Below are positions 730-56,610 of a stretch of 64,000 nucleotides of DNA, one piece after another. The notes under the pieces are model-generated. The model did no database searches. It had not been told where the DNA came from and saw nothing but the letters and a program-made list of their open reading frames with translations. A program made the translations under genes and the position numbers. Position 1 is the first letter of the stretch. Every line of letters begins with the position of its first letter. Source of the DNA: Fimbriosthenelais zetlandica (Eukaryota); the NCBI GenBank assembly GCA_977030845.1, contig OZ365114.1, positions 20,894,001 through 20,958,000 on the forward strand, read 5' to 3'.

Positions 730-981
730 TCCTGATCAAACTGTGTGGCGGGAAACTTTGATCAGCATCTGCCACGCGAGGCAAGCTGTTACCCAGTGCT
801 GGCGCCTAGTGGGTAAAACCAGAACTAGGATCGTAATGGCGGAAGAAGAAGGGCTGGCCGTATGAAGATTTAGTCGGAATATTGTGTGGGAGAGGGTAGT
901 TTTATTTGATATTTGGCCATACAAAGCTATGATTGGTTTATGTGCGTGTCGGCGGTGAGGCGGTGGACTGTAGGTGCAACC
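730..981. promoter_or_regulatory. Probable promoter/5' UTR region, locally CpG-richer, with an E2F-like GCGGGAAA at 748-755
   Basis: Higher CpG density than the flanks, directly upstream of ATG 982; the motif sits between the short inverted repeats TGATCAAA and TTTGATCA. Confidence 0.35.
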
Positions 982-1022
982 ATGAAGGTTGTAGACGATG
1001 TAGATGTCGATGATGGCGACAT
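982..1022 (+). CDS. Microprotein gene exon 1 (MKVVDDVDVDDGD-I)
   Basis: caaccATGa start, then donor AT|GTAAGT at 1023; the phase-2 end matches the next exon. An alternative in-frame ATG lies at 940, with an in-frame TGA at 907-909. Confidence 0.7.
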
Positions 1023-1545
1023 GTAAGTTGAAAGTTCCCTGTTTGTTTTCATTTGCTCAATGACAATGCCTGGCTGAGGGCCAATGTGTATTGGACTATT
1101 TTTGGTACCGGTATATAATATTAGACTATAGTATAGCTAGGTAAACTACAGCCGCTGACGCTGTTGGGACCAGTTAGTCATTTAAAGGAGAATAAATATG
1201 CAAAAAATACATGCCAATATTTGTGTTATTGAGCGATAATAGAAGATGTTAGGCATACTTTTGGCTTACTCAATGTTGACGTTAGGGCGTGGGTGTCACC
1301 CGTGTGGGCGTGTCTCTTATTTCGTTTACTTTAATAATTTTTTGTGGGGATCAGAACAGTTTATTAGCTCCAAAGTATCTTTTTTATAGAGTAATAAACC
1401 AAGGGTCTGGAAGGAATCGTGATTTTCCCTTGGACTAAGTTAAAGACTAAGTTTGGATCAGTGATCAGTGATTGTAAATCATTATGTGCCTAAATAATTA
1501 CCGTCTATGACCTGATATTAAAGCTGTTTCTTTTTATCTTGTTAG

Positions 1546-1651
1546 AATATCGGAGCAGGGGGTACTCGGACACTTCGTCGCCATCTTCACATTTTCATTC
1601 CTGGTCGGTCTTGTGATTCTCCATACCTCCATTCTCTGGCAACGCATGCAG
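1546..1651 (+). CDS. Microprotein gene exon 2, transmembrane helix (ISEQGVLGHFVAIFTFSFLVGLVILHTSILWQRMQ)
   Basis: Acceptor tttctttttatcttgttAG, donor CAG|GTATGT; 106 nt = 1+35 codons; about 22-aa hydrophobic stretch. Confidence 0.8.
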
Positions 1652-2533
1652 GTATGTACAGTTATATATTAGGCAATTTTATTGATAAGCTTTTGATATA
1701 AGGGTGATCTACAGTCTTGTATTTTATCAAAATTTAATTGGGCCTGGAAACCAATACTAATACGGGTACCAGTATTGCCTATTTATAAAATATGGTAAGG
1801 TGCATTCTTACAAAGATTAAAGGCATTACGGAGTACCGGCATCTACAAAATATAGATATAATCTGAAAGATTTATGTGGCTGTGGCCAGTATTAAACGGC
1901 CATTACATGGATCAACATTCAAGGCGCCACTCATGGATATAAGAGACCCCTGCTGTTTTTGTTTAATCTTAATCCCAACAGCTTAAAATATTATGCACCA
2001 TTGAAGAGCCAAAAGACCAGGCACCGACACCAACATTTTTCTCACGTTACTAGCTATAGAAGACGAGTTACAGTACTACAAGTAGAATAAAATGTGCATT
2101 ATGTCAAGAATATTGGAAAAAAATGTGGCAAGAGGATCATTTTTCCATGAAGAATTTCTGCATTATTTAGGACACTTCTTTTATGCTAAGACTGAGGTGG
2201 TCGGATACAATGCTTCATTTCGTATAATGCATGTTAGAGAAAACTGGCTGTACCTTAGTATTGCTTTGCATGATGCTTCCCAGCTTTAACACCATATAAA
2301 ATAGTAATACCAGATAAACTGGAGGGAAATTGAACCCTCCTTAATAGAAATGACAAGGTGTCCAAATTGCCAATAAAAAGGCAAGGACATCAGCTGGAAA
2401 CGGCCACCTGTTTGTAGAAGTGGAAACTAAGCTTGCACTAACATCAGCGTGCCATAGTTTTGCTTAGGACTAGCATTCTCCCCCTCTGCTTGCACTCTTC
2501 CCTCTGACTGACGTATGGCGGTAATTTTTGCAG

Positions 2534-2665
2534 TATGGAGACGGGTTCTACACGTCAGAAAGGAATATGGAACATGTGATGGCTCGTTATTACGGCTTTG
2601 ACTATTATTACGACATGCCCAGGCGTTATGACCTGGCTGTCAATACTACCTATTTCATGCATTAG
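2534..2665 (+). CDS. Microprotein gene exon 3 to stop (YGDGFYTSERNMEHVMARYYGFDYYYDMPRRYDLAVNTTYFMH*)
   Basis: Acceptor aatttttgcAG; phase 0 matches exon 2; 44 codons ending in TAG at 2663-2665. Confidence 0.75.
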   Translation, partial: YGDGFYTSERNMEHVMARYYGFDYYYDMPRRYDLAVNTTYFMH

Positions 2666-3880
2666 CCATTACTACACCTTCAACATAAACCCACCTCGTC
2701 CTGCCTGATCAACTTTTACATGTTGGATCTCTGCAAGTGAGATCAACATACTTTTACCATGTGCCACCGAAGAAAAGATCTGGAACTTGACTCCACTACT
2801 ATGAATTTCCAACTTTCGAAACATGAAAACATGAAATTCATACTCGTTACTCCACATTCCCATGTTACAACCTTACGCTACAGACGTGACAAAGATGGCT
2901 TAGTTATATTTTAATTTTATTAGCACTCCAGAACTTGCTGGTTTTATTTGTATTTGTATAATTTATTGGCAAGGGGGATAAGTTCACTATGTACATTGGT
3001 AATTTTGAGGAGAAATTTCAGTCTCTTACCTGGTTCACGAAAAGGAATGTGATTCGGGGCCAAAATGTTAAAATTTAGTCATGAAACTTAATTTACGAAG
3101 TATAGAATATAGAATCAAATCCTTCCACATATTTAGTATTGTGACTGAATTGTTCTACAACGTTTTGATAAAAGGAATTTGTGAAAGGATTGGCGTAGAA
3201 GAAATATAAATGCAAAAGCACAGGTATTGAAGTTATCTTTTTTGTTATTGGGTATTTGAACAGGAAAGTAAGTGGCACTATTGGTTTGAGAATACAGACA
3301 TTGTGTAGACTAGAATTGTTTGAGAGGTTAAGTGGAATGTGATAAGTGTAGTGATGGGCATCAGGGAGTTTAATTGATAAAGAGTTGGTGCTTCAAATAG
3401 GACTGTGGGGATAACTATTATATAGTTATATAAGGATACACAGATAGTGGCCTGTATTTGTAGAGAAGTTTTCACCTCAAGTATTAAGTGATATGGATTG
3501 TGTCAAGCTTGTATGTAAGGGCCAACTGCATCGCCAATTGATGCACCAGCTGAGTAGGATGTGATGTGAAGCAATCGCCAAATGTGTGAACTCAACTTTA
3601 ACTGTGTAGAAGCCTCAGTCTCCCTAAGTGTTCAACTATTCCTTTGGGTTATTTCAAATAATGGCCATTTAATGTAACTTATAATGATGTCACTAAAGCT
3701 GCTACTAATTATAAGTTATGTATACTAATATAAAGGTCAACATTAGGAGCATTATTCATTAACCATGATGTATTGCCATAAATACAATGCAAAATAAAAA
3801 CTGAAGATAAAGTTAATGAGCTGAGATATTTGTATTATCTCCTACGAATACTTCTGAATTAAATACTCAGTGATGTCCAA

Positions 3881-3930
3881 TCCGGCCATTGTATAACCAT
3901 AGACTAAAGCGTTGTTATACAATGGCCGGA
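3881..3930. repeat. Perfect 17-bp inverted repeat with 16-nt spacer
   Basis: TCCGGCCATTGTATAAC (3881-3897) and GTTATACAATGGCCGGA (3914-3930). Confidence 0.9.
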
Positions 3931-6900
3931 ATATCAGCAATAGGTTTCAATAGTCGTGGTAGTCCATCGCCATGCATTAGTTTTGCTCTTGTATTGCAGT
4001 GTAGATGGCAGCACTCAAATGTGGTTTTGATACTGACGGCGGAGACAACTTTGTGAGTGAATGGAGGTTTTGATGTAAACCTACCATTAACCTATGTCGC
4101 CTGATTATTTTAGAAATGCATATCTTATCACATGTATTTATTTTAGTTCAACAAACCTACATTCCCAACCTCTCGGGTTTACTTTGATGTCCCCATTACT
4201 AGAAGTACTTTGTTTGCGAAACTAATAGTTTGACATACAATTGGATGAAGTAAGTTAAGAGTAGAGGAGCTAAGACTAGGAAATTAAGTTTTGTTTTGTT
4301 AATGATGTAAATCTGTATGTTATTGATGAGTACATCTCGTTCAGGGGACAAAAACTTGAAGCATCTGGACAGGTCTCAAAGGTCTATGGTAAAAACTAGG
4401 TCAAATTTCTGACCAGATGAAGACCGCAATGTAAAACAATTAATTGAATAAAAAGCATGTGACAGATAAGAGTATTAATTCGTTGAAATTTACCCACTTA
4501 CAATACACATGTATTCCCAGAGTTTCAGTGCCACCAGTTCCTTGTTGGATCTTGTTTTGTCATTGATTTTTTATTCTTTTGCCGACCTTGTCGAAATCGA
4601 TTGCCACAAGTACTAAACTCACCTAGAAACTTAAGGAAGAAAGTCTTACCCTCTTTCTGTCTACATTATTTCCCTTGTTGACGCTGGATCCATGCCTGGT
4701 TCTATCTGTTGACCTACTGAGGACTCCCTTGAGATGGTCTTTCAGGTCGATTCTCCGGGTGATCTGTTTTTGAGCGTCGTCAAAAGAGTCAAAACGATGT
4801 GCCAACCATATTGAGATAAGCAACAGAGATTGCCAATTCGCGTGCTATGCCTCCACCCACTTAAAAAGCCCATCTCGTCTGTCGATTGCAACCTATTTAG
4901 TGTGTGTTGTTTCAGCTCCCGGAGAGCATGTCTTCATTTCCATCCTGTAGAGATGGGATTGTATGATTGGCAGCTTGCTTTGGGGTATGTTGCATGCTCG
5001 AGGCGACAAGTGCATTTCGCCCTGGCCCACGTGTTGTCACTGATCAATATAATCTTTTGTGCCCATCTCTAGGGCAGCAAAAGGCCAATGAAACCTGACG
5101 GTGTTGTTCATACTATCAGTGCAGCACTTCTTGGGTTCAATAGCCAGGATTTGAACATCTGACCTATGAGGGCAAATGTTTATGGGACTGTTTACATGGG
5201 ATTTTCTTTCCGTCTCTATTTTAGCTATGATCTATAGCGTCTTCTATGATCATAGTTTCAACTTTAGGAAAGGTCTCCTCATTTACAAACTGTATATAAG
5301 TACATAGGACCTTTAACATAAATCAATTGTCTATGGGCAACTTGCATGATATAAGGCGAAGAGACGGGAAATGTGAGCAGATCCAGATGGAGATGTCCAT
5401 AAAGCTGCTAGTAAGGCAAATATAGGACCTCGTTTAGGTTTATGAAGTCTGGTCAACTGTCCGACGATGTATTCAGCAGCTTTATCCTGATGGCATTCGT
5501 GGAGAATAGAGAGAGCAACTCGTTGCCGGGCAGCCCTGGATTATCCTCATCTGATAATGGAGGCCTTCATCCCCGGAGCAATCTACTTATCTGACCACAA
5601 GATGCCATCTGGCGAGTCGCTCCATGGCCACGATAAGCGCCCCAAATCAGTTTCCCTGTTTTAACTGTCATTAGGGAACCATCCAATAAGAATTGCCACT
5701 CCAGCTTCCAGTCTTATTATTCTACCCATTTCACACTTGGAGTCAATGCGTTGCCTTTATAGAGACACTACTAGCTCAAGGCATCCAGATTATTGAATGA
5801 ACCTTTCCAGTAGGAATCCTGGCCCTTGGAATGTGGCCACTTGCGTCCCCAGTCTAGTTTATTAAGAAATAAGAAACTGCTGTACAATACATGCTAAGAT
5901 AAAGAAGAGATGGAATGTATTGGTCACTTAGTTGGGAGATTGATCTGGATTGTATTCATGCATGCAGGGTATCAAGGGCACTACCACTCAGCAGCTCTTT
6001 TTGCCATGGAATAAATCATATATTCTCCCCATATTATCAGCTGTGCATGTGGACGGCTCACTGCTCCTCCAAATGTAGTTCATCTCCTAAAATAAGAGAT
6101 TAAAAAAGAGCCAATATTTCCTGACGTATGTGGATCGTTAGATCAACTGGTTAAGTTTCCACGTCTGGACAGATTTGAGCACGGTTCTTTGCTAGATTTG
6201 CCGAGAGCTTTGACTGTTCCCTTCATATTTTTAACCTGGAAGTTTTGCAGCTCAACCATTTTTCTTTGGGGTGAGAGGAGCATGAGAGGAGAGGGTTTTC
6301 AAAAGAAATCCATTTAAGTGTAAATGAGACTATCCAGGCTTGGGGCTCGGTTTACATGAGATTTACTGGAAAATGTCTTGAGGCTGTGTGCTAACCCACT
6401 GCTTGTGTGGCATGATGTCTGCCCTACAGGCTGCCAGCTGTGGTCTGATAAAGCCCTCTGCACGAGTATTGCCTGTGTACGTCACAGACGCCTGTCACAG
6501 GAGCGGATGACATCATTGGTCAGCCGACAGCTCCACGTCATTTTTCCATTTCCCATTTTTTTGGCAAAATCCAGCAGTTGCCTTCCCTTTAGACATCATA
6601 CTTCCTTCGTATTAGGCCTAGTGTTGGGAGTTGGTTGCATCAACAGGGAAAATAAGTTATTGGTTGATGATGCATAGCATACTGTTTGATCAAAATCCTT
6701 TGAAAACAGAATCTAAATCATCTCTCAATTCTGATAATGTAATATTGCTGTCCGCTTTGTAATCCCTCTCAACACTCGGAAGTCATTCACGCCTATCAGA
6801 TAGCACATCTAGATGGACGATGTTGCATAGCAACGCAATCAACTATTAGATCAGAATGAAAAATCGAAGAGCTTCTAATGTTTCCTCCGTCTTCTACCTC

Positions 6901-9239: not shown

Positions 9240-9631
9240 CTGCGGAGAGAAAAAAGTTATTGCCATATAGAGTTTGTTACTGGTGGCGGAGAGATGGTTA
9301 TTACTCTTAGCAAGTTGGTTATTTCTGCTTTGCTAGCGCTGAGGACTGGCTGTAGAAAGTGCCATATCAGACAGAGCTCAGATGGCATGGATAAATTGGT
9401 CAATATCATATAACTATGGCACTCAGGACTCCAGAGTGGCCATGTTATTTGGACGAATGATACTTGCTATAGCGATATATTGATGATTGATACTATAGTT
9501 ATAAGTTTATATCATTTACCGGCTAAGGATATATCGATGATACCATAGCTATAATCATAATTACTTGTTAGGGATATATTGATAGTAAACATTGTAATCT
9601 ATATATTATATGGTTGGAGTATGTCACTTAC

Positions 9632-9809
9632 TTTAAACCATAAATAGTAAGTATGACTTCCAGATAGAACCCAGGGTGGACTACAAACTTGTATGTACAA
9701 ATGGTGTCTTTTGGCAGCCAGTGGTCAGGAGAAGACACAGAGCCTTCACTGGCATTAAAAACCCAATCACACCAGCTGTTGGTCTTCTTATGTCCGTCTT
9801 GATGCCACT
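9632..9809 (-). CDS. CUB protein exon E (CUB3 N-half: WCDWVFNASEGSVSSPDHWLPKDTICTYKF)
   Basis: Acceptor tactttttacttcAG, donor AA|GTAAGT; 178 nt, phase 1 to 2. Confidence 0.9.
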
Positions 9810-10096
9810 CTGAAGTAAAAAGTACCTTGAAGTAAAACACATTTCAGCGATATAGAAGGCCTTTTGAAGCGGCCAAGGACCTTGCGTCTTATAGACCTAT
9901 TACTTAAGGGCAAATCAGCTTCCTTTGAACGTCTGATGCTTTCAATTGAAAAAAATGGATTGAAAGAAAATGCTACATGTTTTAGAGTAGAATAAGACTA
10001 AATTCAAAGGTTGCCCTCATGAATAGACCTGTAGAAGTGAAATTCATTTTAAAAGCTCGATAATTGATTTATGTTGTTTTCTAAAGTTCATCTTAC

Positions 10097-10296
10097 CTTT
10101 CGTTAGTCTTATTGCTGTGCCATGGAAGCCTTTTATATCATAGGGAGGACTGTCCTGGCTTGAAAAAAACGAAAGGAAAAGGTGGCCGGTAGATGATGTA
10201 ATATCTGGTATATTTCTCCCACAAAAGCGGCCAATGAGAGGGCTGTAGGTAGAATTACCATCGTGGATAACCATGTAATCGTCCCTACAGTCAGTC
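10097..10296 (-). CDS. CUB protein exon D (CUB2 C-half: DCRDDYMVIHDGNSTYSPLIGRFCGRNIPDITSSTGHLFLSF...GF)
   Basis: Acceptor ttttcttttattcctAG, donor G|GTAAGA; 200 nt, phase 2 to 1; classic DY-x-I-x-DG...IGRFCG motif. Confidence 0.95.
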
Positions 10297-10928
10297 CTAG
10301 GAATAAAAGAAAACGGTCAATAAGAGAGAGATGTCCTGGACCCCATTGCTGCGGATTAGAAAACGCACCACAGGAGGTTCCGTGATCTGTATAATGCATA
10401 TACAAGGGCCATCTTAGATAATTATTTTAAGAAGTCAATTTTTAGAGTAGAACTGTTACAGTCGATATGAAAGGCTCTTTAGATTGGAAGCATTGCCTGG
10501 ATATAGCCTTATAGAGAATGAGCGTGCTTATCCAGGATTAGGGCTTCTGACTGTATACCACTATACAGCTGTACCCTACTCATTCTGTAGAATGATAAAA
10601 ATCCAGTAGGCAATCTGGATTAACTTTTCAAAGTGTTGAACAACAGGTTGTCTGTGACAGTGAATGCTGCTAAGAGGAACATATGGCAGGGATTAGGGAG
10701 GATATTTCCATGCATTAAGCATAACTGTCTGGTTCCCTAATCCCCTGTATGATTCCCTTGTTAAATTGTAAAGGATTTGAGGATGGCATCTGATATTGGA
10801 AAACTTTGTAACCTTTTCAACTGTTCTCAAACTGAATTATTTAGCAAGAGAAAAATATTGAAACAAAGGCAGATCTTTGTAACATAAGGCATGCAGAAAA
10901 GGGAAGAAAGAAGTGTAGCATCTCTTAC

Positions 10929-11118
10929 GTTTCTCTGATGGAGAACTCTCTCGGTTTTGGTGCAGCCCCCTGGAACGTGAGTTGTAACGTGGAGCTGTCA
11001 TCCAGGGAGTAAACGTGATAGTGACATTCCATATTGGGCGGGTAAATACCCGGATATCCAGGCGATAATATATCGCATAAGCCATCACAATCTTCCGACA
11101 CCACTGTCCAATAACAAA
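10929..11118 (-). CDS. CUB protein exon C (CUB2 N-half: CYWTVVSEDCDGLCDILSPGYPGIYPPNMECHYHV...LQLTF)
   Basis: Acceptor ctactttttttccacAG, donor AC|GTAAGA; 190 nt, phase 1 to 2; canonical SPGYPxxYPPNxxC CUB motif. Confidence 0.93.
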
Positions 11119-12779
11119 CTGTGGAAAAAAAGTAGACAGATAAGTCGATTAAATTGAATGAAGTAAATCTATTATGCGGGTATCCCAGATCAGGAACCTC
11201 TTGATTTATGTTGGAAAGCAAGCGGTATCATATGCATGAGTGGTTGCAAAATAGCGACACCCAGACCGCATCTTTCTTATGTTCCCTGATAACGTTAAGA
11301 GCAACATAGGAACACCTCCTTCTTATGGAATGGATCAATTTCAGTCGATGCCCAGGTCTATAAGAAGGAGTGGTAGGAAGTAATTAGATTTTGTGCTGAT
11401 ATCATCTGATCAGGCTTCCACTGTAAAGAGGCATTTTAATAGAAAATTCCATGCACCTAACTAGACGATAAACAGTCATAAAGCTGCATCTGATGCTGAG
11501 GAAGGAGAATCCTATCATCCTCTTGTACAATTCATATACCAACTCATGTCCTCATATATAATTGCTGAGTCGTATGGGTATACAGTGAGACGTTTTTCTG
11601 TATTGATGGTTGATTGATTAAGAGCACTAAGCTCATGGATATCATGAAACATTGAATTTAAGATTGTCCCATCGGAAACACTCATCTGGGTGAAAACCGG
11701 GTTCATCTAATTCGAAAAATTAAGAATATTGATAACGCTGGTTATCAGCTGAGCTACTGATTGGCAATCAGCATCCGGTTATTTGACATCATTAGGTTTT
11801 ACAGTGCCATAGCCCATCTCCCCAGCTCTACTTTTACCCTCCTGTGTGTACTTTAGGTTTCATTTCCATTTCAATGGTTGATATAATGAAATTATCCCCA
11901 CCTATAATCAGTGGTAATCATATAGACAATGCGTCACCCAGCACCAACCAGCCGTGTTGATTGGATCATTGGCGATGATGAGGTCTTTTTTAGGGGCCAT
12001 ATCTCCAATCGACTCAAATGATTCTGCCTAGTGGAGTATAATATAGTGGAACCATTTTTTGGATGTTTCACAATTACAATCTCCATTTTTTGTGCATCCT
12101 TGTGGAACGCTCACCGAGATGCAGGAAGTCTGCTTTCCAATTTCCCCTCGTTTCAAAATGACGTCAATGTTTCAGCCTTGACTGGGGGCATAAATATACA
12201 TGACAGTAACATTGACCTATATTACAGCTTAGTCCTGAACACTTGTCTGACGATAATCGACAAGAATCGCTCAGGAATCCAAACAAAAATGAAAAAATAC
12301 CATAACATTCATATGTTTACTGAAAAGGTTTTTTGGTATTTGCTCTGGTAGATGGGCAGAGGCAATCATATATGCTTTCAGGTATAGTGGGACAGCAGCA
12401 GCTGGGAAAAGGGAATCCACGTCCCCGAGTGGGAACTCTATTATGATTGTCAACATCCATACAAGCATAATATTAGCTTATGCAATCTGCTAGCCTGGGA
12501 ACAGACACTAAACTTCCTAAGTCATCAAAGGCTTCATCCATCAGGCTCCATCACCCTGAAGACCATAGACAGAACATAGTGTCTGGATGAGGTAAACCAA
12601 AGCCTATAGCTCTCCATTCAACGGTTATTCACCTCCAACCATTGCTGTGCCTTCCTCGGTTTTCAAATCTCAATAATTATCTTGGCTACATTCAATGGAA
12701 TACTGAAAGTAAACTGTTATCAGCTGCAATTTACACATTATGAGAAGTTTTGTCTGGAGCTTCTTTCCCAGCTTTGGTG

Positions 12780-22740: not shown

Positions 22741-24171
22741 TCTGTCTGCCTGGAAACCACAGGGTTGAATTGAAAGTAGCACCTACGTTTTAATTATGGG
22801 TGCTTAATAAAGTCAGATGGTAACTTCCCCCCTCATTTAAGTGGCAAGCCGTTCAAATTGTAATCGTAATAGGCCTATTTTGTTCACATTGCTTCTCTAG
22901 AGCAACTGTTGTCGCCAGTTGTGTAGAGGGAACCATCCATGCAGCCAACTGTCAATATTCTGATCGCGACACAGATGAGAAGCTGTCAGCAAATGTCCCT
23001 ACAAATCTCTACCACCCACAGCAACGCTAGCCAACCAATGGATATCGCCATCTCTTGCTGTACGCCATTCGATATCTGACCTGCCGGATAACTAAGAGAT
23101 CCAGTCAGGTGGAGGACCATTTTTTCTATGCCTCAACAATTTGAATCGGTTTATAGATGTTTCTGGCATAAAAAACAAAAAAAGGGCGTATATATGTGCA
23201 TAGCAATCGGTTTGGAGTGGCGTTATATATATGGATTCAGTGAAAGAAATAGTATCAGGGACATTACTGTGAAAATATCATTACCTCAGAGTCATAAAAG
23301 ACCGGGGCATGCATTGAAGTTGATTCCAGGGCAATGGAGAAATGGCCATGGAAAATGATAGTCAATTTCATGTATCGATACCTTTCAGAAATATTGGATT
23401 CTGGATGAATTATACAATCTGAAATACTGAGCAATGATGTTCTGCAAAAAGGACATAGCTAGAACGAGCTGTGCACTGTGGGCAATTTGATATGGGATTA
23501 GACGGAATTTTAATCTTTATAAGGGAAAGAAAGTGTAACAAAAACGGACAGAAATTGATTGAAGCCATTCCAGGAGCATGTGGCTGTTGTATGTTATGTC
23601 ACGTTCAGTATTATTTTGGGGAGACTGGAGTGCATCACTAGTCAAGGCTTGACTGCCTTTGAAGAAATGAATATCTAAACACTACTGCTATTCACTACTG
23701 CAGTTTGTAGACTGTCAAGCATTTAAAATAATGACCTGTACGTTTTATTCTTATAGTCTACAACCACATGGGATCACTCGTTATAAGTTTCCTCAGTCTC
23801 CTCACAAAAAACTTTAATAGGCCTGTACCTCCACCACTCGCTGTCACCAACAGTCAGCTTGCAAAAGCGCAGTCTTATCTCTTCCCTCTTCTGTGGCTTG
23901 TACGATGTATATAATGTGAAATCCATTTATAGTTATAAAACCTTTAACGGGATAGAAATAAAGATTCACGGGAGGAAGCAAAAGCAACTGACTTTCGGAA
24001 GAATACATGTGTGGGAAGGGAGATTGTGAATTCATCCTGTGTTTAAAAAATATTGTTATCGTGTGTACTCTTTGGCCCAAATTACGTGACTCTGAAAGGC
24101 ACTGTTTGCCTTTCCCCTGATGGCCGTGTTTTCTGTGATAGGATTATGCTGTTTAACACCATGCATAGAAC

Positions 24172-24208
24172 TGTCACAAGTGTCACAAGTGTCACAACTG
24201 TCACAAGT
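24172..24208. repeat. 9-bp tandem repeat (TGTCACAAG), about 4 copies, just inside the large CUB intron
   Basis: Seen directly in the sequence. Confidence 0.85.
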
Positions 24209-24234
24209 GATGTTCGCCTTTAAGGGAAACTTAC

Positions 24235-24443
24235 CTATGTTCATATAACGGTAGTTGACAGTAAATGTGGTGTGCACGTCCACCTGTTCTGAGTAGAACT
24301 CTATTTCGGCTGTACTGCGTGTAGAAAATTTGCGTACGTTGATTTGACCCGTCTCATAACTCCCACACAATGTATTAGGTGGATACGGGTATCTACCGGG
24401 CTGGCGAAGTCCATCCCATAATTTCAAATATCCATCGTGACAC
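24235..24443 (-). CDS. CUB protein exon B (CUB1 C-half: CHDGYLKLWDG...LCGSYE...EIEFYSEQ...FTVNYRY)
   Basis: Acceptor cttcttgttgccAG, donor G|GTAAGT; 209 nt, phase 2 to 1. Confidence 0.9.
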
Positions 24444-53700: not shown

Positions 53701-55912
53701 AGTCCTCTTGTTGTTCTAGTTAGTTTGTATTACTCTTGACAAAACAGTGTTGTTCTAAAGGGAAAGGCCTATTGTTTTTGTGAATTCCTTTGTGTAACCA
53801 AAGAATATTAAAAAAGTTACACAAGGTCTTCTTTAGACAGAACCTCTCACCCGTTCTCTTCTTGGCCACTCCATTGAGCAAAAAGATTGACAAAAAGCTA
53901 AATGATACCGTTTTAGAATGTTTAGCCATCAATCATAACCTGAGAGATAGTCCAACATTGGACATTCATTGTATGTATTCTTATACTAATCGATCAATTT
54001 TGTCTGCTCAGTTTTGTTTCGATTAGATTGTAGAAACATATATATTTTCCCTTGAAGAACCTTTTGATTATATAATAGTCTGGATATTGAGTTATTGAAA
54101 TCTCGGTCAGCCCCGTGAAAGATAGCTGCCAGACAAATTCTGTTGTGCTACTTTTTCACAAAAGGGGGTTTTATAGATCAATAATAGTTATTATTTCCCT
54201 TAAAGGAAACATTTTTATAATACATACTGTGCTCATGCGTTGCCATATGTCATCAGTGGATATCATATCTCTCGCTCTTCATCATTAGTTGGTGTAAGCA
54301 AGGCTGACCTGGTGAAATCAGCCATCCTTACATAACAAGCCTTCCCACAAAGGTCAGTACAATACATCGGTCTGATACAATACACAGACTGCTTCTGAGT
54401 AGGTGGCTCCTGACTGATAGGCTGCAATCAACTCTGCTGGGCCTACTTGTCAGTCCCTCAAGTCTTTGATGATATTAGATTCTATATTGTCTGTTTGCTT
54501 CCCCGCGGTTTTCCTTCATATAGTCAGCCACTATTTCTGCCTCTATAGAATCCGCTAGTGGACACAGAAATCTGAGATATATACCATTACGATTTGTTTG
54601 TGTTTGGTATCCATTTTTTCAGTTACACAGATCTATGTGTTTCAGTTACACAGATGCCTCTCATGCCCTTGTTCAAAACATAACTGGCGTGCCTCCTTCT
54701 CTTGGAAATACAAGTCCTGCTGCTATTGATGGCACAGATTGTAGTTGTAGATTTGCTTCCTGGTACTTTCCTAATACCAGAAGTTGACCAGCTGCTGCTG
54801 GCCTCATTTAATAAATACATAATTATCTATTTTGACAAATTTAATAGCCATGGTCCCCTCAAGATGCTGCTGTGGACTGCTCGCAATCTCTGAGTAAACA
54901 CTGTTCATGACGATGCGAGCCAATAATAAATCGTGCAAACCATTGCCTTAAAACTTCCGCAATTAAAAGTTTAATTTCCATCATGACAAACCTGCCACCA
55001 GCATAACTGAAGAAAAGGCCTCAGGGGAGACCTTCGCCCCTGAAGCAACTGTCAAAATTCCCGCCCGGGAAGGCTTGGTCATGCATTAATGATTTCGCCA
55101 AAAGACCTCATCCATTTACTGCCGGCAAAGATGAATCACATTGAAATTACAGATTTGAGGATGTGGGTTCATATAATTGCTCACAAACGGTTGATTAAAA
55201 CGGTTTTCCTTCTGTGGCCCTGTAGGAAATTGAGTTAAATTGCCTTCCATCAGTGTCTTGGCTGCTTGGATGGAAATGATAAGCATGCATATGGTACCAT
55301 AAGACCCAATTCAATTTCTGGTATAATGAGGGATTCCCGTACTTTTATTATTGGCATGTTAAAGTGCATTTTAATCATAATTGCCTCGAATAAGGTAATA
55401 ATTATCAAGACTTCTGCCCATAGCTTTATAGATACACAATGGCATGTCTTATACTACCTCAACTCATTACTAAAGGTGGGTCATCAGGTGGATGGGTCAC
55501 AGATGCACCGTTGACGCCAGGCCCGTAGCCAGAGGGGGTGACGTAGGGTACGCGTCACCCCCCCAAATTTTCCTAAAAGAAAAAAGAAAAAAGGAAAAAA
55601 GAAAGAAATAGCACTTCTGACGGCTTCATCGTGTCCTTGTACAACGGAACACAACCTAATAGGGTTTATCCGTCTCGCCCCTCCCCTTTTTCATTTCCAT
55701 TATAATTATCCTCCCCCTTCCCATGGCTTTCACCCTACTGTCAATCCATTTGACTCCCTTGCCTCCTTCCTCACCTCTCTACCATCCGCGCTGAATCTCC
55801 TTCCCCATTTTTTATTTTTCTCCCCTGCTACACCACACCCAGCCCCCCACTTTCTACTTTTCCTCTTCCTTCTCGTCAGCTGTCCCATACTAGGGGCCAT
55901 GCTACCGATTCT

Positions 55913-55941
55913 GTGTGGGTGTGTGTGGGTGTGTGTGGGAG
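55913..55941. repeat. (GTGTGTGG)n microsatellite inside the transposon
   Basis: Seen directly in the sequence. Confidence 0.85.
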
Positions 55942-56252
55942 GGGGCGGGAGGGCGGGCGATGGGGGGCAAGGGTATATGTTAGAGTAAAGGGACAGTGCC
56001 TGGGTGTGGATAAAAAAGGACAAAGGGTACAAAAGAATGACACTTTGGTGGGTGCATGGACCACAAATGTAGGCCTTCACCCCATTAAATGACGAAACAG
56101 ATATATTTATTAGGTCTAATATATTAAGCACGTTACTCACTTTCGGGAGCAGTCTCGGGTATGTGTTTTGTTCTTTCGGGATGGTGGGTTGGGGGGGATG
56201 GTGGGGGCAGGTACAACCATGGTGGGAGCTCTTGATATGTGCAGCTTGGTGG

Positions 56253-56610
56253 GTGGGAAGGAGCTTGCCCAGTGGGAGGGAGCTTCGACTGTGGGAGGGA
56301 GCTTGGACCATGGGAGGGAGCTTGCCCAGTGGGAGGGAGTTTGGTCGGCGGGATGCAGATTGTACCGTGGGACTGAACTTGAAGCGTGGGAGTGAACTTG
56401 GTCGGTGGGAGGGAGCTTGGAGTGTGGGAGGGAGCTTGGGCCATGGAAGAGAACATCTGATAATCATTCAGCTGTAGAGGAATATTGGTCGGTGGGAGGG
56501 AGTTTGGTCAGTGGGAGGGAGCTTGGACCATGTACGGAGCTGGGTCAGTAGGCGAGAGCTTGGGCCATGGGAAAGAGCTTGGGTTGTGGGAGGGTGTTTG
56601 ATGGGGGAGT
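56253..56610. repeat. 19-bp G-rich minisatellite (consensus GTGGGAGGGAGCTTGGNCC), about 17-18 degenerate units, inside the transposon
   Basis: Units read directly from the sequence; it explains the overlapping low-complexity ORFs at 55730-56477. Confidence 0.9.

What the first reader, a model, noticed from the sequence alone, without database searches (positions are those of the whole stretch)
982..2665. Hidden 3-exon gene for a 92-aa single-pass membrane microprotein with a Tyr/Asp-rich tail
Seen: three short exons (41+106+132 nt) with canonical GT-AG sites and matching phases splice to MKVVDDVDVDDGDIISEQGVLGHFVAIFTFSFLVGLVILHTSILWQRMQYGDGFYTSERNMEHVMARYYGFDYYYDMPRRYDLAVNTTYFMH*. None of this appears in the ORF track, and I do not recognise the family. 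Inference: an acidic cytosolic N-terminus with a dileucine-like DDGDII, one TM helix, and a luminal C-terminus. The tail has an N-T-T sequon, a YYGFDYYYD cluster (Tyr next to Asp, the usual tyrosine-sulfation context) and an RR dibasic site. It could be an unannotated type II microprotein or a precursor releasing a small Tyr-rich peptide.
Basis: partly seen in the sequence, partly recalled or inferred. Interest (0 to 1): 0.72.

Follow-up and report, generated by a model that had tools for sequence, protein, structure and literature searches.

The report
Real conserved spliced membrane microprotein gene
The three short exons form a real gene for a 92- or 106-residue single-pass membrane protein: a related species has the same gene as a spliced transcript under strong purifying selection, but it belongs to no known family and its tyrosine-rich tail more likely faces the cytosol than the lumen.

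Summary
Exons 982-1022, 1546-1651 and 2534-2665 have canonical GT-AG sites and splice in frame to the quoted 92-aa protein.

The gene model alone is not beyond chance: shuffled sequence gives 0-7 such models per 64-kb strand.

Conservation shows the gene is real. A search with exon 3 found one relative, P0001 (106 aa). It lies on a 2761-nt contig (L002, run ERR14707600) where the coding sequence is uninterrupted. That contig aligns to the window exon by exon, with joints exactly at 1022/1546 and 1651/2534. Of 45 base differences in 321, 35 are at third codon positions (p about 1e-9). dN/dS is about 0.06 overall and 0.02 over the membrane helix plus tail, with dS about 0.6-0.9. Similarity ends at the stop codon.

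P0001 starts at an upstream in-frame ATG, which is 940 in the window. A conserved 9-codon uORF (929-958) overlaps it.

There is no Pfam, PDB, Atlas, metagenome or paralogue match. The gene is single-copy and apparently lineage-restricted.

That undercuts the sulfation, glycosylation and cleavage ideas.

No RNA runs were listed for this species. The scan has noted this stretch only at this same place, not on other DNA.

The parts
929..958 (+). Conserved 9-codon upstream ORF. Its ATG has G at -3, it lies out of frame with the main ORF, overlaps ATG-940, and ends in TGA 24 nt before ATG-982.
   Evidence: The relative's transcript has the same length and the same aligned start and stop (L002 48-77). 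Similarity to L002 begins at window 924.
940..981 (+). Optional 14-codon N-terminal extension from the first in-frame ATG (weak context, T at -3), giving a 106-aa form.
   Evidence: The ATG and open frame are conserved in P0001/L002. There are 4 synonymous and 4 non-synonymous codon changes, so constraint is weaker. An in-frame TGA at 907 closes the frame upstream.
982..1022 (+). Exon 1 coding part, from the strong-context ATG (A at -3) to the GTAAGT donor. It encodes the acidic cluster DDVDVDDGD (994-1020).
   Evidence: The acidic cluster is identical in the relative despite 3 synonymous changes.
1023..1545 (+). Intron 1 (523 nt, GT-AG, phase 2).
   Evidence: Absent from the relative's contig. 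The joint falls exactly at 1022/1546. GC is 37% against 49% in the coding sequence.
1546..1651 (+). Exon 2. It carries the membrane helix (hydrophobic core at residues 20-45 of the 92-aa form, bases 1562-1639) and the start of the tail.
   Evidence: 91% DNA identity to L002 142-251. In the membrane-core codons (34-59 of the 106-codon numbering) there is no amino-acid change, only 7 synonymous changes. The best 19-residue Kyte-Doolittle window scores 2.35. AlphaFold2 on P0001 gives a helix at 25-64 with pLDDT above 90 in the core.
1652..2533 (+). Intron 2 (882 nt, GT-AG, phase 0).
   Evidence: Absent from the relative's contig. The joint falls exactly at 1651/2534.
2534..2665 (+). Exon 3 coding part. 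It encodes a 43-residue Tyr/Arg/Asp/Met-rich tail with two YxxPhi motifs (YYGF, YYDM), RR, an NTT sequon, and the TAG stop at 2663-2665.
   Evidence: 93% amino-acid identity to P0001 64-106, with only 3 amino-acid changes against about 20 synonymous ones. Similarity ends at the stop codon, and the 3' UTRs cannot be aligned.
2666..4452 (+). Presumed 3' UTR, extent unknown. Candidate poly(A) signals lie at 3793, 3858 and 4447.
   Evidence: Signals listed. The relative's contig carries about 2.4 kb of AT-rich non-coding sequence after its stop. No reads were available to fix the 3' end.

Best explanation
This is a single-copy, three-exon protein-coding gene for a small single-pass membrane protein. 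The product is 92 aa from ATG-982, or 106 aa from ATG-940. The gene is shared with at least one moderately distant relative and is kept under strong purifying selection.

Shown: the exon structure, splicing at both predicted joints in the relative, codon-level constraint, the absence of any detectable family, and single-copy status.

Inferred: the protein inserts as a type III (N-terminus outside, C-terminus cytosolic) signal-anchor protein. It would expose a short invariant acidic stub (DDVDVDDGD) to the lumen or exterior and a 47-residue Tyr-rich tail to the cytosol.

Both the membrane helix and the tail are essentially invariant at dS about 0.8. The helix has small-xxx-small spacing (G..xA, S..xG) and a His at each end. 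A helix that served only as an anchor would tolerate I/L/V exchanges. I therefore think it most likely works as a small regulatory or adaptor subunit. In that model the helix packs against a partner membrane protein, or against itself, and the tail's tyrosine motifs (YYGF, YYDM, the latter of YxxM type, flanked by Asp) recruit cytosolic sorting or phosphotyrosine-binding machinery.

Translation is probably tuned by the conserved overlapping uORF. The uORF and the weak context of ATG-940 would favour the strong-context ATG-982.
For: Exons and translation are confirmed. An HMMER search of 1.84 billion representatives with exon 3 found P0001 (106 aa, E 5e-19, 93% identity). P0001 lies on a 2761-nt Logan contig with an uninterrupted coding sequence at 59-379. 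That contig aligns to window 924-1026, 1546-1656 and 2529-2664 only, so both introns are removed exactly at the predicted joints. There are 45 differences in 321 nt with no indels. Thirty-five are at third positions (binomial p 1.3e-9), giving 31 synonymous against 11 non-synonymous codon changes. NG86 dN/dS is 0.063 overall and 0.023 for codons 33-106, with dS 0.6-0.9. The 3' UTR cannot be aligned, and coding GC is 49% against 37% in the introns. The gene is single-copy in the 447-Mb genome. For topology, the N flank has charge -7, the C flank 0, and the hydrophobic core is 26 residues long. AlphaFold2 gives one confident long helix. YxxPhi motifs lie at residues 68 and 74 of the 92-aa form and are conserved. 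The uORF is conserved in position and length, and the start-codon contexts are as described.
Against: No RNA or DNA sequencing runs were listed for this species, so transcription and splicing are shown only in the relative. I could not confirm that ERR14707600 is an RNA library. An intronless retrocopy in DNA would give the same contig, though it too would descend from an mRNA spliced this way. Topology, partner binding, sorting and phosphorylation are all inferred from sequence rules. Only two sequences exist, so no covariation or site-level analysis is possible. The tail model has low confidence (pLDDT below 60). The actual start codon is undetermined.
Confidence: 0.55

Rival explanations
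1. The gene is real but has the reader's topology: a type II protein with the acidic N-terminus in the cytosol and the Tyr-rich tail in the lumen or outside. There the tail could be N-glycosylated at NTT, tyrosine-sulfated or otherwise modified or cross-linked, or cut at RR to release a short Tyr-rich peptide.
For: NTT, RR and the Tyr-Asp cluster are all conserved despite synonymous changes in their codons. Tyr next to Asp is the usual sulfation context (established knowledge).
Against: The flank charge difference of +7 (C minus N) and the long 26-residue core both favour N-terminus out. Every residue of the tail is conserved, so conservation of these motifs does not set them apart. There is no signal peptide. 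RR is not followed by a typical amidation or processing context. The DDGDII motif fails the dileucine consensus and is not conserved.
Confidence: 0.15
2. The gene is real, but the product is a small accessory subunit of an organellar membrane complex, for example in the mitochondrial inner membrane. Many single-pass subunits of 60-110 aa with invariant helices and aromatic-rich tails are found there.
For: The size, a single invariant helix, very low dN/dS and a three-exon structure are typical of such subunits (general knowledge). The 106-aa form begins with a short Arg-containing stretch.
Against: No match to any Pfam family of respiratory-chain or ATP-synthase small subunits, even at E up to 10, and none to PDB chains. 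Such core subunits are widespread, whereas this protein has one relative among 15 billion proteins. A strongly acidic segment directly after the start is unlike a presequence.
Confidence: 0.12
3. This is not a protein-coding gene. It would be a chance spliced ORF, or a non-coding RNA conserved for nucleotide-level reasons.
For: Three-exon ORF models with splice sites this good arise by chance at about 0-7 per 64-kb strand in shuffled sequence. No expression data are available for this species.
Against: 78% of differences are at third codon positions (p 1.3e-9). dN/dS is 0.06. There are no indels or stops over 321 nt at dS about 0.7. The start and stop positions are conserved. Similarity collapses right after the stop. 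The relative's contig is spliced at both joints.
Confidence: 0.02

Closest known systems
Type III (N-out, C-in) signal-anchor microproteins such as stannin and several SMIM proteins
   Same: About 90-100 aa, no cleavable signal peptide, a short N-terminal stub, one helix in the N-terminal half and a longer C-terminal tail. The flank charges fit this class.
   Different: No sequence relationship was detected to any of them (Pfam, HMMER, word search). The resemblance is in architecture only, and the comparison with named members rests on my recall, not on a test.
Minimal transmembrane signalling adaptors such as DAP10 (HCST), with a YxxM tail
   Same: About 90 aa, single-pass, a very short outer part, and a cytosolic tail with a conserved YxxM-type motif (YYDM) next to acidic residues.
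   Different: No signal peptide, no outer cysteine for disulfide dimers in the 92-aa form, and no acidic residue inside the helix. No sequence similarity. The phosphotyrosine role is untested.
Single-helix regulators of pumps and channels: FXYD proteins, phospholamban/sarcolipin-type 'regulins', KCNE subunits
   Same: A small single-pass protein whose membrane helix is invariant, as expected when the helix itself is the binding surface. An F-D-Y-Y string faintly recalls the FxYD motif.
   Different: No Pfam match at E up to 10. The FxYD-like string lies after the helix, not before it. Regulins are tail-anchored with no long C-terminal tail. Here the tail is as conserved as the helix.

Membership tests
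FXYD ion-transport regulators (Pfam PF02038) | A PFxYD motif in the outer segment just before the membrane helix, plus a profile match | tested here: not met
   No Pfam hit for P0001 or for the exons at E up to 10. The only F-D-Y-Y string lies about 25 residues after the helix.
Phospholamban/sarcolipin-type regulins | A tail-anchored peptide of up to about 60 aa, with a C-terminal helix and almost no lumenal tail | tested here: not met
   The helix is at residues 20-45 of 92 and is followed by a 47-residue tail. No Pfam hit.
KCNE potassium-channel subunits (Pfam PF02060) | Profile match to the KCNE helix and juxtamembrane region | tested here: not met
   No Pfam hit at E up to 10.
DAP10/DAP12-type transmembrane adaptors | A signal peptide, an outer Cys for dimerisation, a charged residue in the helix, and a cytosolic Tyr motif (YxxM or ITAM) | tested here: not met
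   Only the YxxM-type motif is present (YYDM, residue 74). There is no signal peptide, no Asp, Lys or Arg in the core, and no Cys in the 92-aa form.
Type III (N-out) signal-anchor membrane proteins (a topological class, not a homologous family) | No cleavable signal peptide, one long hydrophobic segment near the N-terminus, and an N flank less positive than the C flank | tested here: met
   The core is 26 residues, the N flank has charge -7 and the C flank 0. There is one confident helix. This is a sequence rule only. The orientation itself cannot be measured with these tools.
SMIM19 / UPF0697 (a lead from memory only) | Profile match to the Pfam family | tested here: not met
   No Pfam family matched P0001 at E up to 10.
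Protein-coding gene under purifying selection | Open frame kept, excess third-position changes, dN/dS well below 1, and conservation confined to the coding sequence | tested here: met
   35 of 45 differences are at third positions, dN/dS is 0.06, there are no indels, and the UTRs cannot be aligned.

The most novel reading that the evidence does not exclude
The gene was born recently and is confined to a narrow invertebrate lineage, with only one relative among about 15 billion public proteins. It has already become a tightly constrained minimal transmembrane adaptor whose invariant helix docks on a membrane partner and whose Asp-flanked YxxM/YxxPhi tail signals or sorts through tyrosine motifs. 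That would be an independent invention of a DAP10-like module outside vertebrates.
Probability: 0.12. Interest if true: 0.55.

Novelty: new member of a known kind. Interest (0 to 1): 0.36.

Why it matters
The locus shows that a tool-free reading of splice signals can recover a real gene that ORF-based tracks miss and that is absent from very large protein collections. It also adds a strongly constrained, apparently lineage-restricted single-pass microprotein. Its helix and Tyr-rich tail are both invariant, which makes it a clean candidate for a small regulatory subunit. The conserved overlapping uORF, with two candidate starts, gives a compact case for studying start-site choice. The gene should be added to this genome's annotation. 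On its own it does not open a long-standing question.

Tried and rejected
- **Sequencing runs.** I searched twice, with window 900-2900 (kind rna) and 2534-3300 (kind any). None was listed, so read laying could not be used. I did not pass the relative's run id to read laying because it did not come from the look-up of sequencing runs.
- **Pfam.** Exon 2 and exon 3 separately gave nothing meaningful. Full-length P0001 gave no family at E up to 10.
- **ESM Atlas feature search.** Exon 3 and P0001 gave no usable hit.
- **PDB sequence search.** No match.
- **Word-indexed search of 5.8 billion clusters.** P0001 found only itself. Exon 3, used to catch short fragments, found no candidate. P0001's cluster has a single member.
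- **Metagenome contig scan with P0001.** 561 pattern matches, none confirmed.
- **Paralogues in the window's own genome.** None found with exon 3, with L002 DNA or with P0001.
- **Full-text paper search.** No papers for three peptide strings and the run id.
- **Other 'called genes' on L002.** The two calls (957-1370 minus strand, 1832-2314 plus strand) contain stops under code 11 and are not open frames. I treated them as caller artefacts in the 3' UTR.
- **Second hit of the representative search.** P0002 (372 aa, E 2e-4) is an unrelated repeat protein matching on composition.
- **Fold search.** Not run. The model is one helix plus low-confidence coil, so matches would be meaningless.
- **Complex prediction.** Not run. 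No partner is known, and I do not claim a specific binding pair.
- **The spliced 92-aa sequence.** I did not type it into any tool. All searches used exon references or P0001.
- **Alternative third exon at 2191-2289.** It turned up in the enumeration and was rejected because it has no counterpart in L002.

Full report
**Observation**

The window is eukaryotic-looking DNA of about 40% GC with no gaps.

- An ATG at 982 with A at -3.
- A 41-nt first exon ending in ...GACAT|gtaagt.
- A 106-nt second exon, 1546-1651, preceded by a pyrimidine-rich tract and ttag, and ending in CAG|gtatgt.
- A 132-nt third exon, 2534-2665, preceded by ttttgcag and ending in TAG.

The phases match (2, then 0), and the 279-nt product translates to the 92-aa sequence quoted.

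With a simple consensus matrix, the two donors rank in the top 0.5% of all GT dinucleotides in the window. The acceptors rank at the 96th and 84th percentiles. None of the exons is long enough to appear in an ORF list.

It would add 14 residues, giving 106 aa. A TGA at 907 closes the frame upstream of it.

**Is the model more than chance?**

On its own, no. I counted every ATG-start three-exon model of at least 270 nt, with introns of 60-1000 nt and splice scores at least as good as those observed.

| Sequence | Models found |
|---|---|
| + strand of the window | 3, all at this locus |
| - strand of the window | 0 |
| Ten first-order Markov shuffles | 0-7 each, mean about 2.8 |

A model of this quality can therefore arise by chance, and independent evidence was needed.

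**Independent evidence: a spliced orthologue**

An exhaustive HMMER search of 1.84 billion representative proteins with exon 3 alone (43 aa) returned one real hit. This is P0001, 106 aa, E 5e-19, 93% identical over its last 43 residues. The other hit, P0002, is an unrelated repeat protein.

P0001 matches the window's product from ATG-940 over its full length: 95 of 106 residues are identical and there are no gaps.

P0001 is encoded on one Logan contig of run ERR14707600, 2761 nt long (L002). Its coding sequence is uninterrupted at 59-379.

L002 aligns to the window, and to the whole 447-Mb genome, in three blocks only:

| L002 | Window | DNA identity |
|---|---|---|
| 43-143 | 924-1026 | 81% |
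| 142-251 | 1546-1656 | 91% |
| 243-378 | 2529-2664 | 85% |

In the contig the exon joints read GGCGATGT|AATATCGG and GCATGCAG|TATGGAGA. Both introns are therefore missing exactly at 1022/1546 and 1651/2534.

The simplest reading is that L002 is a spliced mRNA of a related species. An intronless retrocopy would also have to descend from an mRNA spliced this way.

**Selection**

Over 321 aligned coding bases there are 45 differences and no indels. Thirty-five are at third codon positions (binomial p 1.3e-9 against one third). Thirty-one changed codons are synonymous and 11 are not.

| Region (106-codon numbering) | NG86 dN/dS |
|---|---|
| Whole ORF | 0.063 |
| 92-aa ORF (codons 15-106) | 0.043 |
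| Helix plus tail (codons 33-106) | 0.023 |

dS is about 0.6-0.9, and maximum-likelihood estimates agree. Codons 33-106 carry only three amino-acid changes, all in the linker after the helix.

The acidic cluster DDVDVDDGD is also invariant, despite three synonymous changes.

Similarity stops at the stop codon, which is TAG here and TAA in the relative. The 2.4-kb 3' region of L002 has no significant alignment to the 6 kb downstream in the window, even with 7-base words.

Coding GC is 49% against 37% in the introns and 35% in the relative's UTR.

Together this is the signature of a translated, constrained gene. The non-coding or chance reading is effectively excluded.

**Start codon and uORF**

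Both in-frame ATGs are conserved.

A 9-codon upstream ORF is also conserved in position and length, from ATG 929 (G at -3) to TGA 956-958. The peptide is MIGLCACRR here and MPSLCVCPR in the relative. It overlaps ATG-940 out of frame and ends 24 nt before ATG-982.

ATG-940 has T at -3 in both species. ATG-982 has a purine at -3 in both.

Codons 1-14 show 4 synonymous and 4 non-synonymous changes, so they are less constrained.

By the scanning model (established knowledge), this layout favours ATG-982, reached by leaky scanning or by reinitiation. This is inference. The transcription start in this species is unknown.

**The protein**

The features below are, in the numbering of the 92-aa form.

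- **Hydrophobic core:** one 26-residue core, residues 20-45. The best 19-residue Kyte-Doolittle window scores 2.35.
- **N-terminus:** a 19-residue segment with net charge -6.
- **Tail:** 47 residues containing 9 Tyr, 5 Arg, 5 Met and 4 Asp.
- **Motifs:** two YxxPhi motifs, YYGF at 68 and YYDM at 74, and one NTT sequon at 86.
- **No dileucine signal:** nothing matches [DE]xxxL[LI].

AlphaFold2 on P0001 without an alignment gives one confident helix (25-64, pLDDT above 90 in the core) and a short helix at 75-82. The rest has low confidence. I did not run fold searches on such a model.

**Topology**

The 15 residues before the core have net charge -7. The 15 after have net charge 0, with Gln-Arg directly after the core.

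Under the charge-difference rule for eukaryotic signal anchors, the more positive flank stays in the cytosol. Long hydrophobic segments and short unfolded N-termini also favour translocation of the N-terminus. Both points are established knowledge, not tested here.

On that basis the protein should be type III: acidic stub outside or in the lumen, Tyr-rich tail in the cytosol. It removes the basis for N-glycosylation, tyrosine sulfation and dibasic processing of the tail. I put about 80% on N-out among secretory-pathway options.

**How it most likely works**

A helix that served only as an anchor would tolerate I/L/V exchanges at dS about 0.8. This one shows none. It also has small-residue spacing (G-x-x-x-A, S-x-x-x-G), a polar Thr/Ser face and a His at each end.

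The tail is equally fixed.

I therefore favour a small regulatory or adaptor subunit. The helix would pack against a partner membrane protein or against itself. The cytosolic Asp-flanked tyrosines would act as sorting signals (YxxPhi) or phosphotyrosine docking signals (YxxM).

All of this is inferred.

**Relation to known families**

| Search | Result |
|---|---|
| Pfam, exons 2 and 3 separately | nothing meaningful |
| Pfam, P0001, E up to 10 | no family |
| PDB chains | none |
| ESM Atlas clusters | no usable hit |
| 5.8 billion 90% clusters, P0001 (58-185 aa) | only itself |
| 5.8 billion 90% clusters, exon 3 (24-75 aa) | no candidate |
| JGI metagenome contigs | none confirmed |
| Paralogues in the own genome | none |
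| Paper full text, peptide strings and run id | no papers |

The window's own protein is not in the 15-billion-protein collection. It is therefore either unannotated or from a genome whose annotation is not public.

With dN this low, orthologues in sampled taxa should have been detectable. The family therefore looks lineage-restricted, though thin sampling of relatives cannot be ruled out.

In architecture it resembles type III microproteins such as stannin or some SMIM proteins, minimal adaptors such as DAP10, and single-helix regulators (FXYD, regulins, KCNE). It fails the defining features of each family that I could test.

**Surroundings**

- The 10 kb upstream (L006) shows no obvious coding ORFs.
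- Downstream on the opposite strand, ORFs at about 9.6-11.2 kb encode pieces of CUB domains: PF00431 at E 5e-5 and 7e-4, the second just under the curated cut-off. This is a convergent neighbour.
- Another agent's note on this genome calls it 'probably annelid' (s1-188368). I did not test that.
- The scan's earlier notes list this stretch only at this same place.

**Verdict**

The 'real hidden microprotein gene' interpretation is supported. The topology and modification inferences are probably wrong.

This is a new, apparently lineage-restricted family within a well-known kind, small single-pass membrane proteins. It is worth annotating and of moderate interest.

Noticed in passing
window 929-958 (+); L002 48-77: A 9-codon uORF is conserved in position, length and stop between the two species. 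It overlaps the weak-context first in-frame ATG (940) and ends 24 nt before the strong-context ATG (982). This is a compact possible start-site switch.
   Followed up: partly
window 9628-11221 (-): Three minus-strand ORF pieces encode parts of CUB domains (Pfam PF00431, E 5e-5 and 7e-4). This looks like a convergent multi-exon neighbour gene. Its full extent and identity were not worked out.
   Followed up: partly
window 55730-56467 (-): A 245-aa ORF rich in Pro, Ser and Leu, with a repeated '...LP.GKLPP.VQA.SH...' unit and a THTHTHPH run. It may be a repeat-derived or low-complexity ORF rather than a gene.
   Followed up: no
window 24056-24427 (-): A 123-aa ORF containing a CDSCDTCDTCDS run. 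Its nature is unknown.
   Followed up: no
L002 957-1370 (-) and 1832-2314 (+): The collection lists two further 'called genes' (137 and 160 aa) on the relative's contig, but both contain stops under code 11. They are probably gene-caller artefacts inside a long AT-rich 3' UTR.
   Followed up: partly
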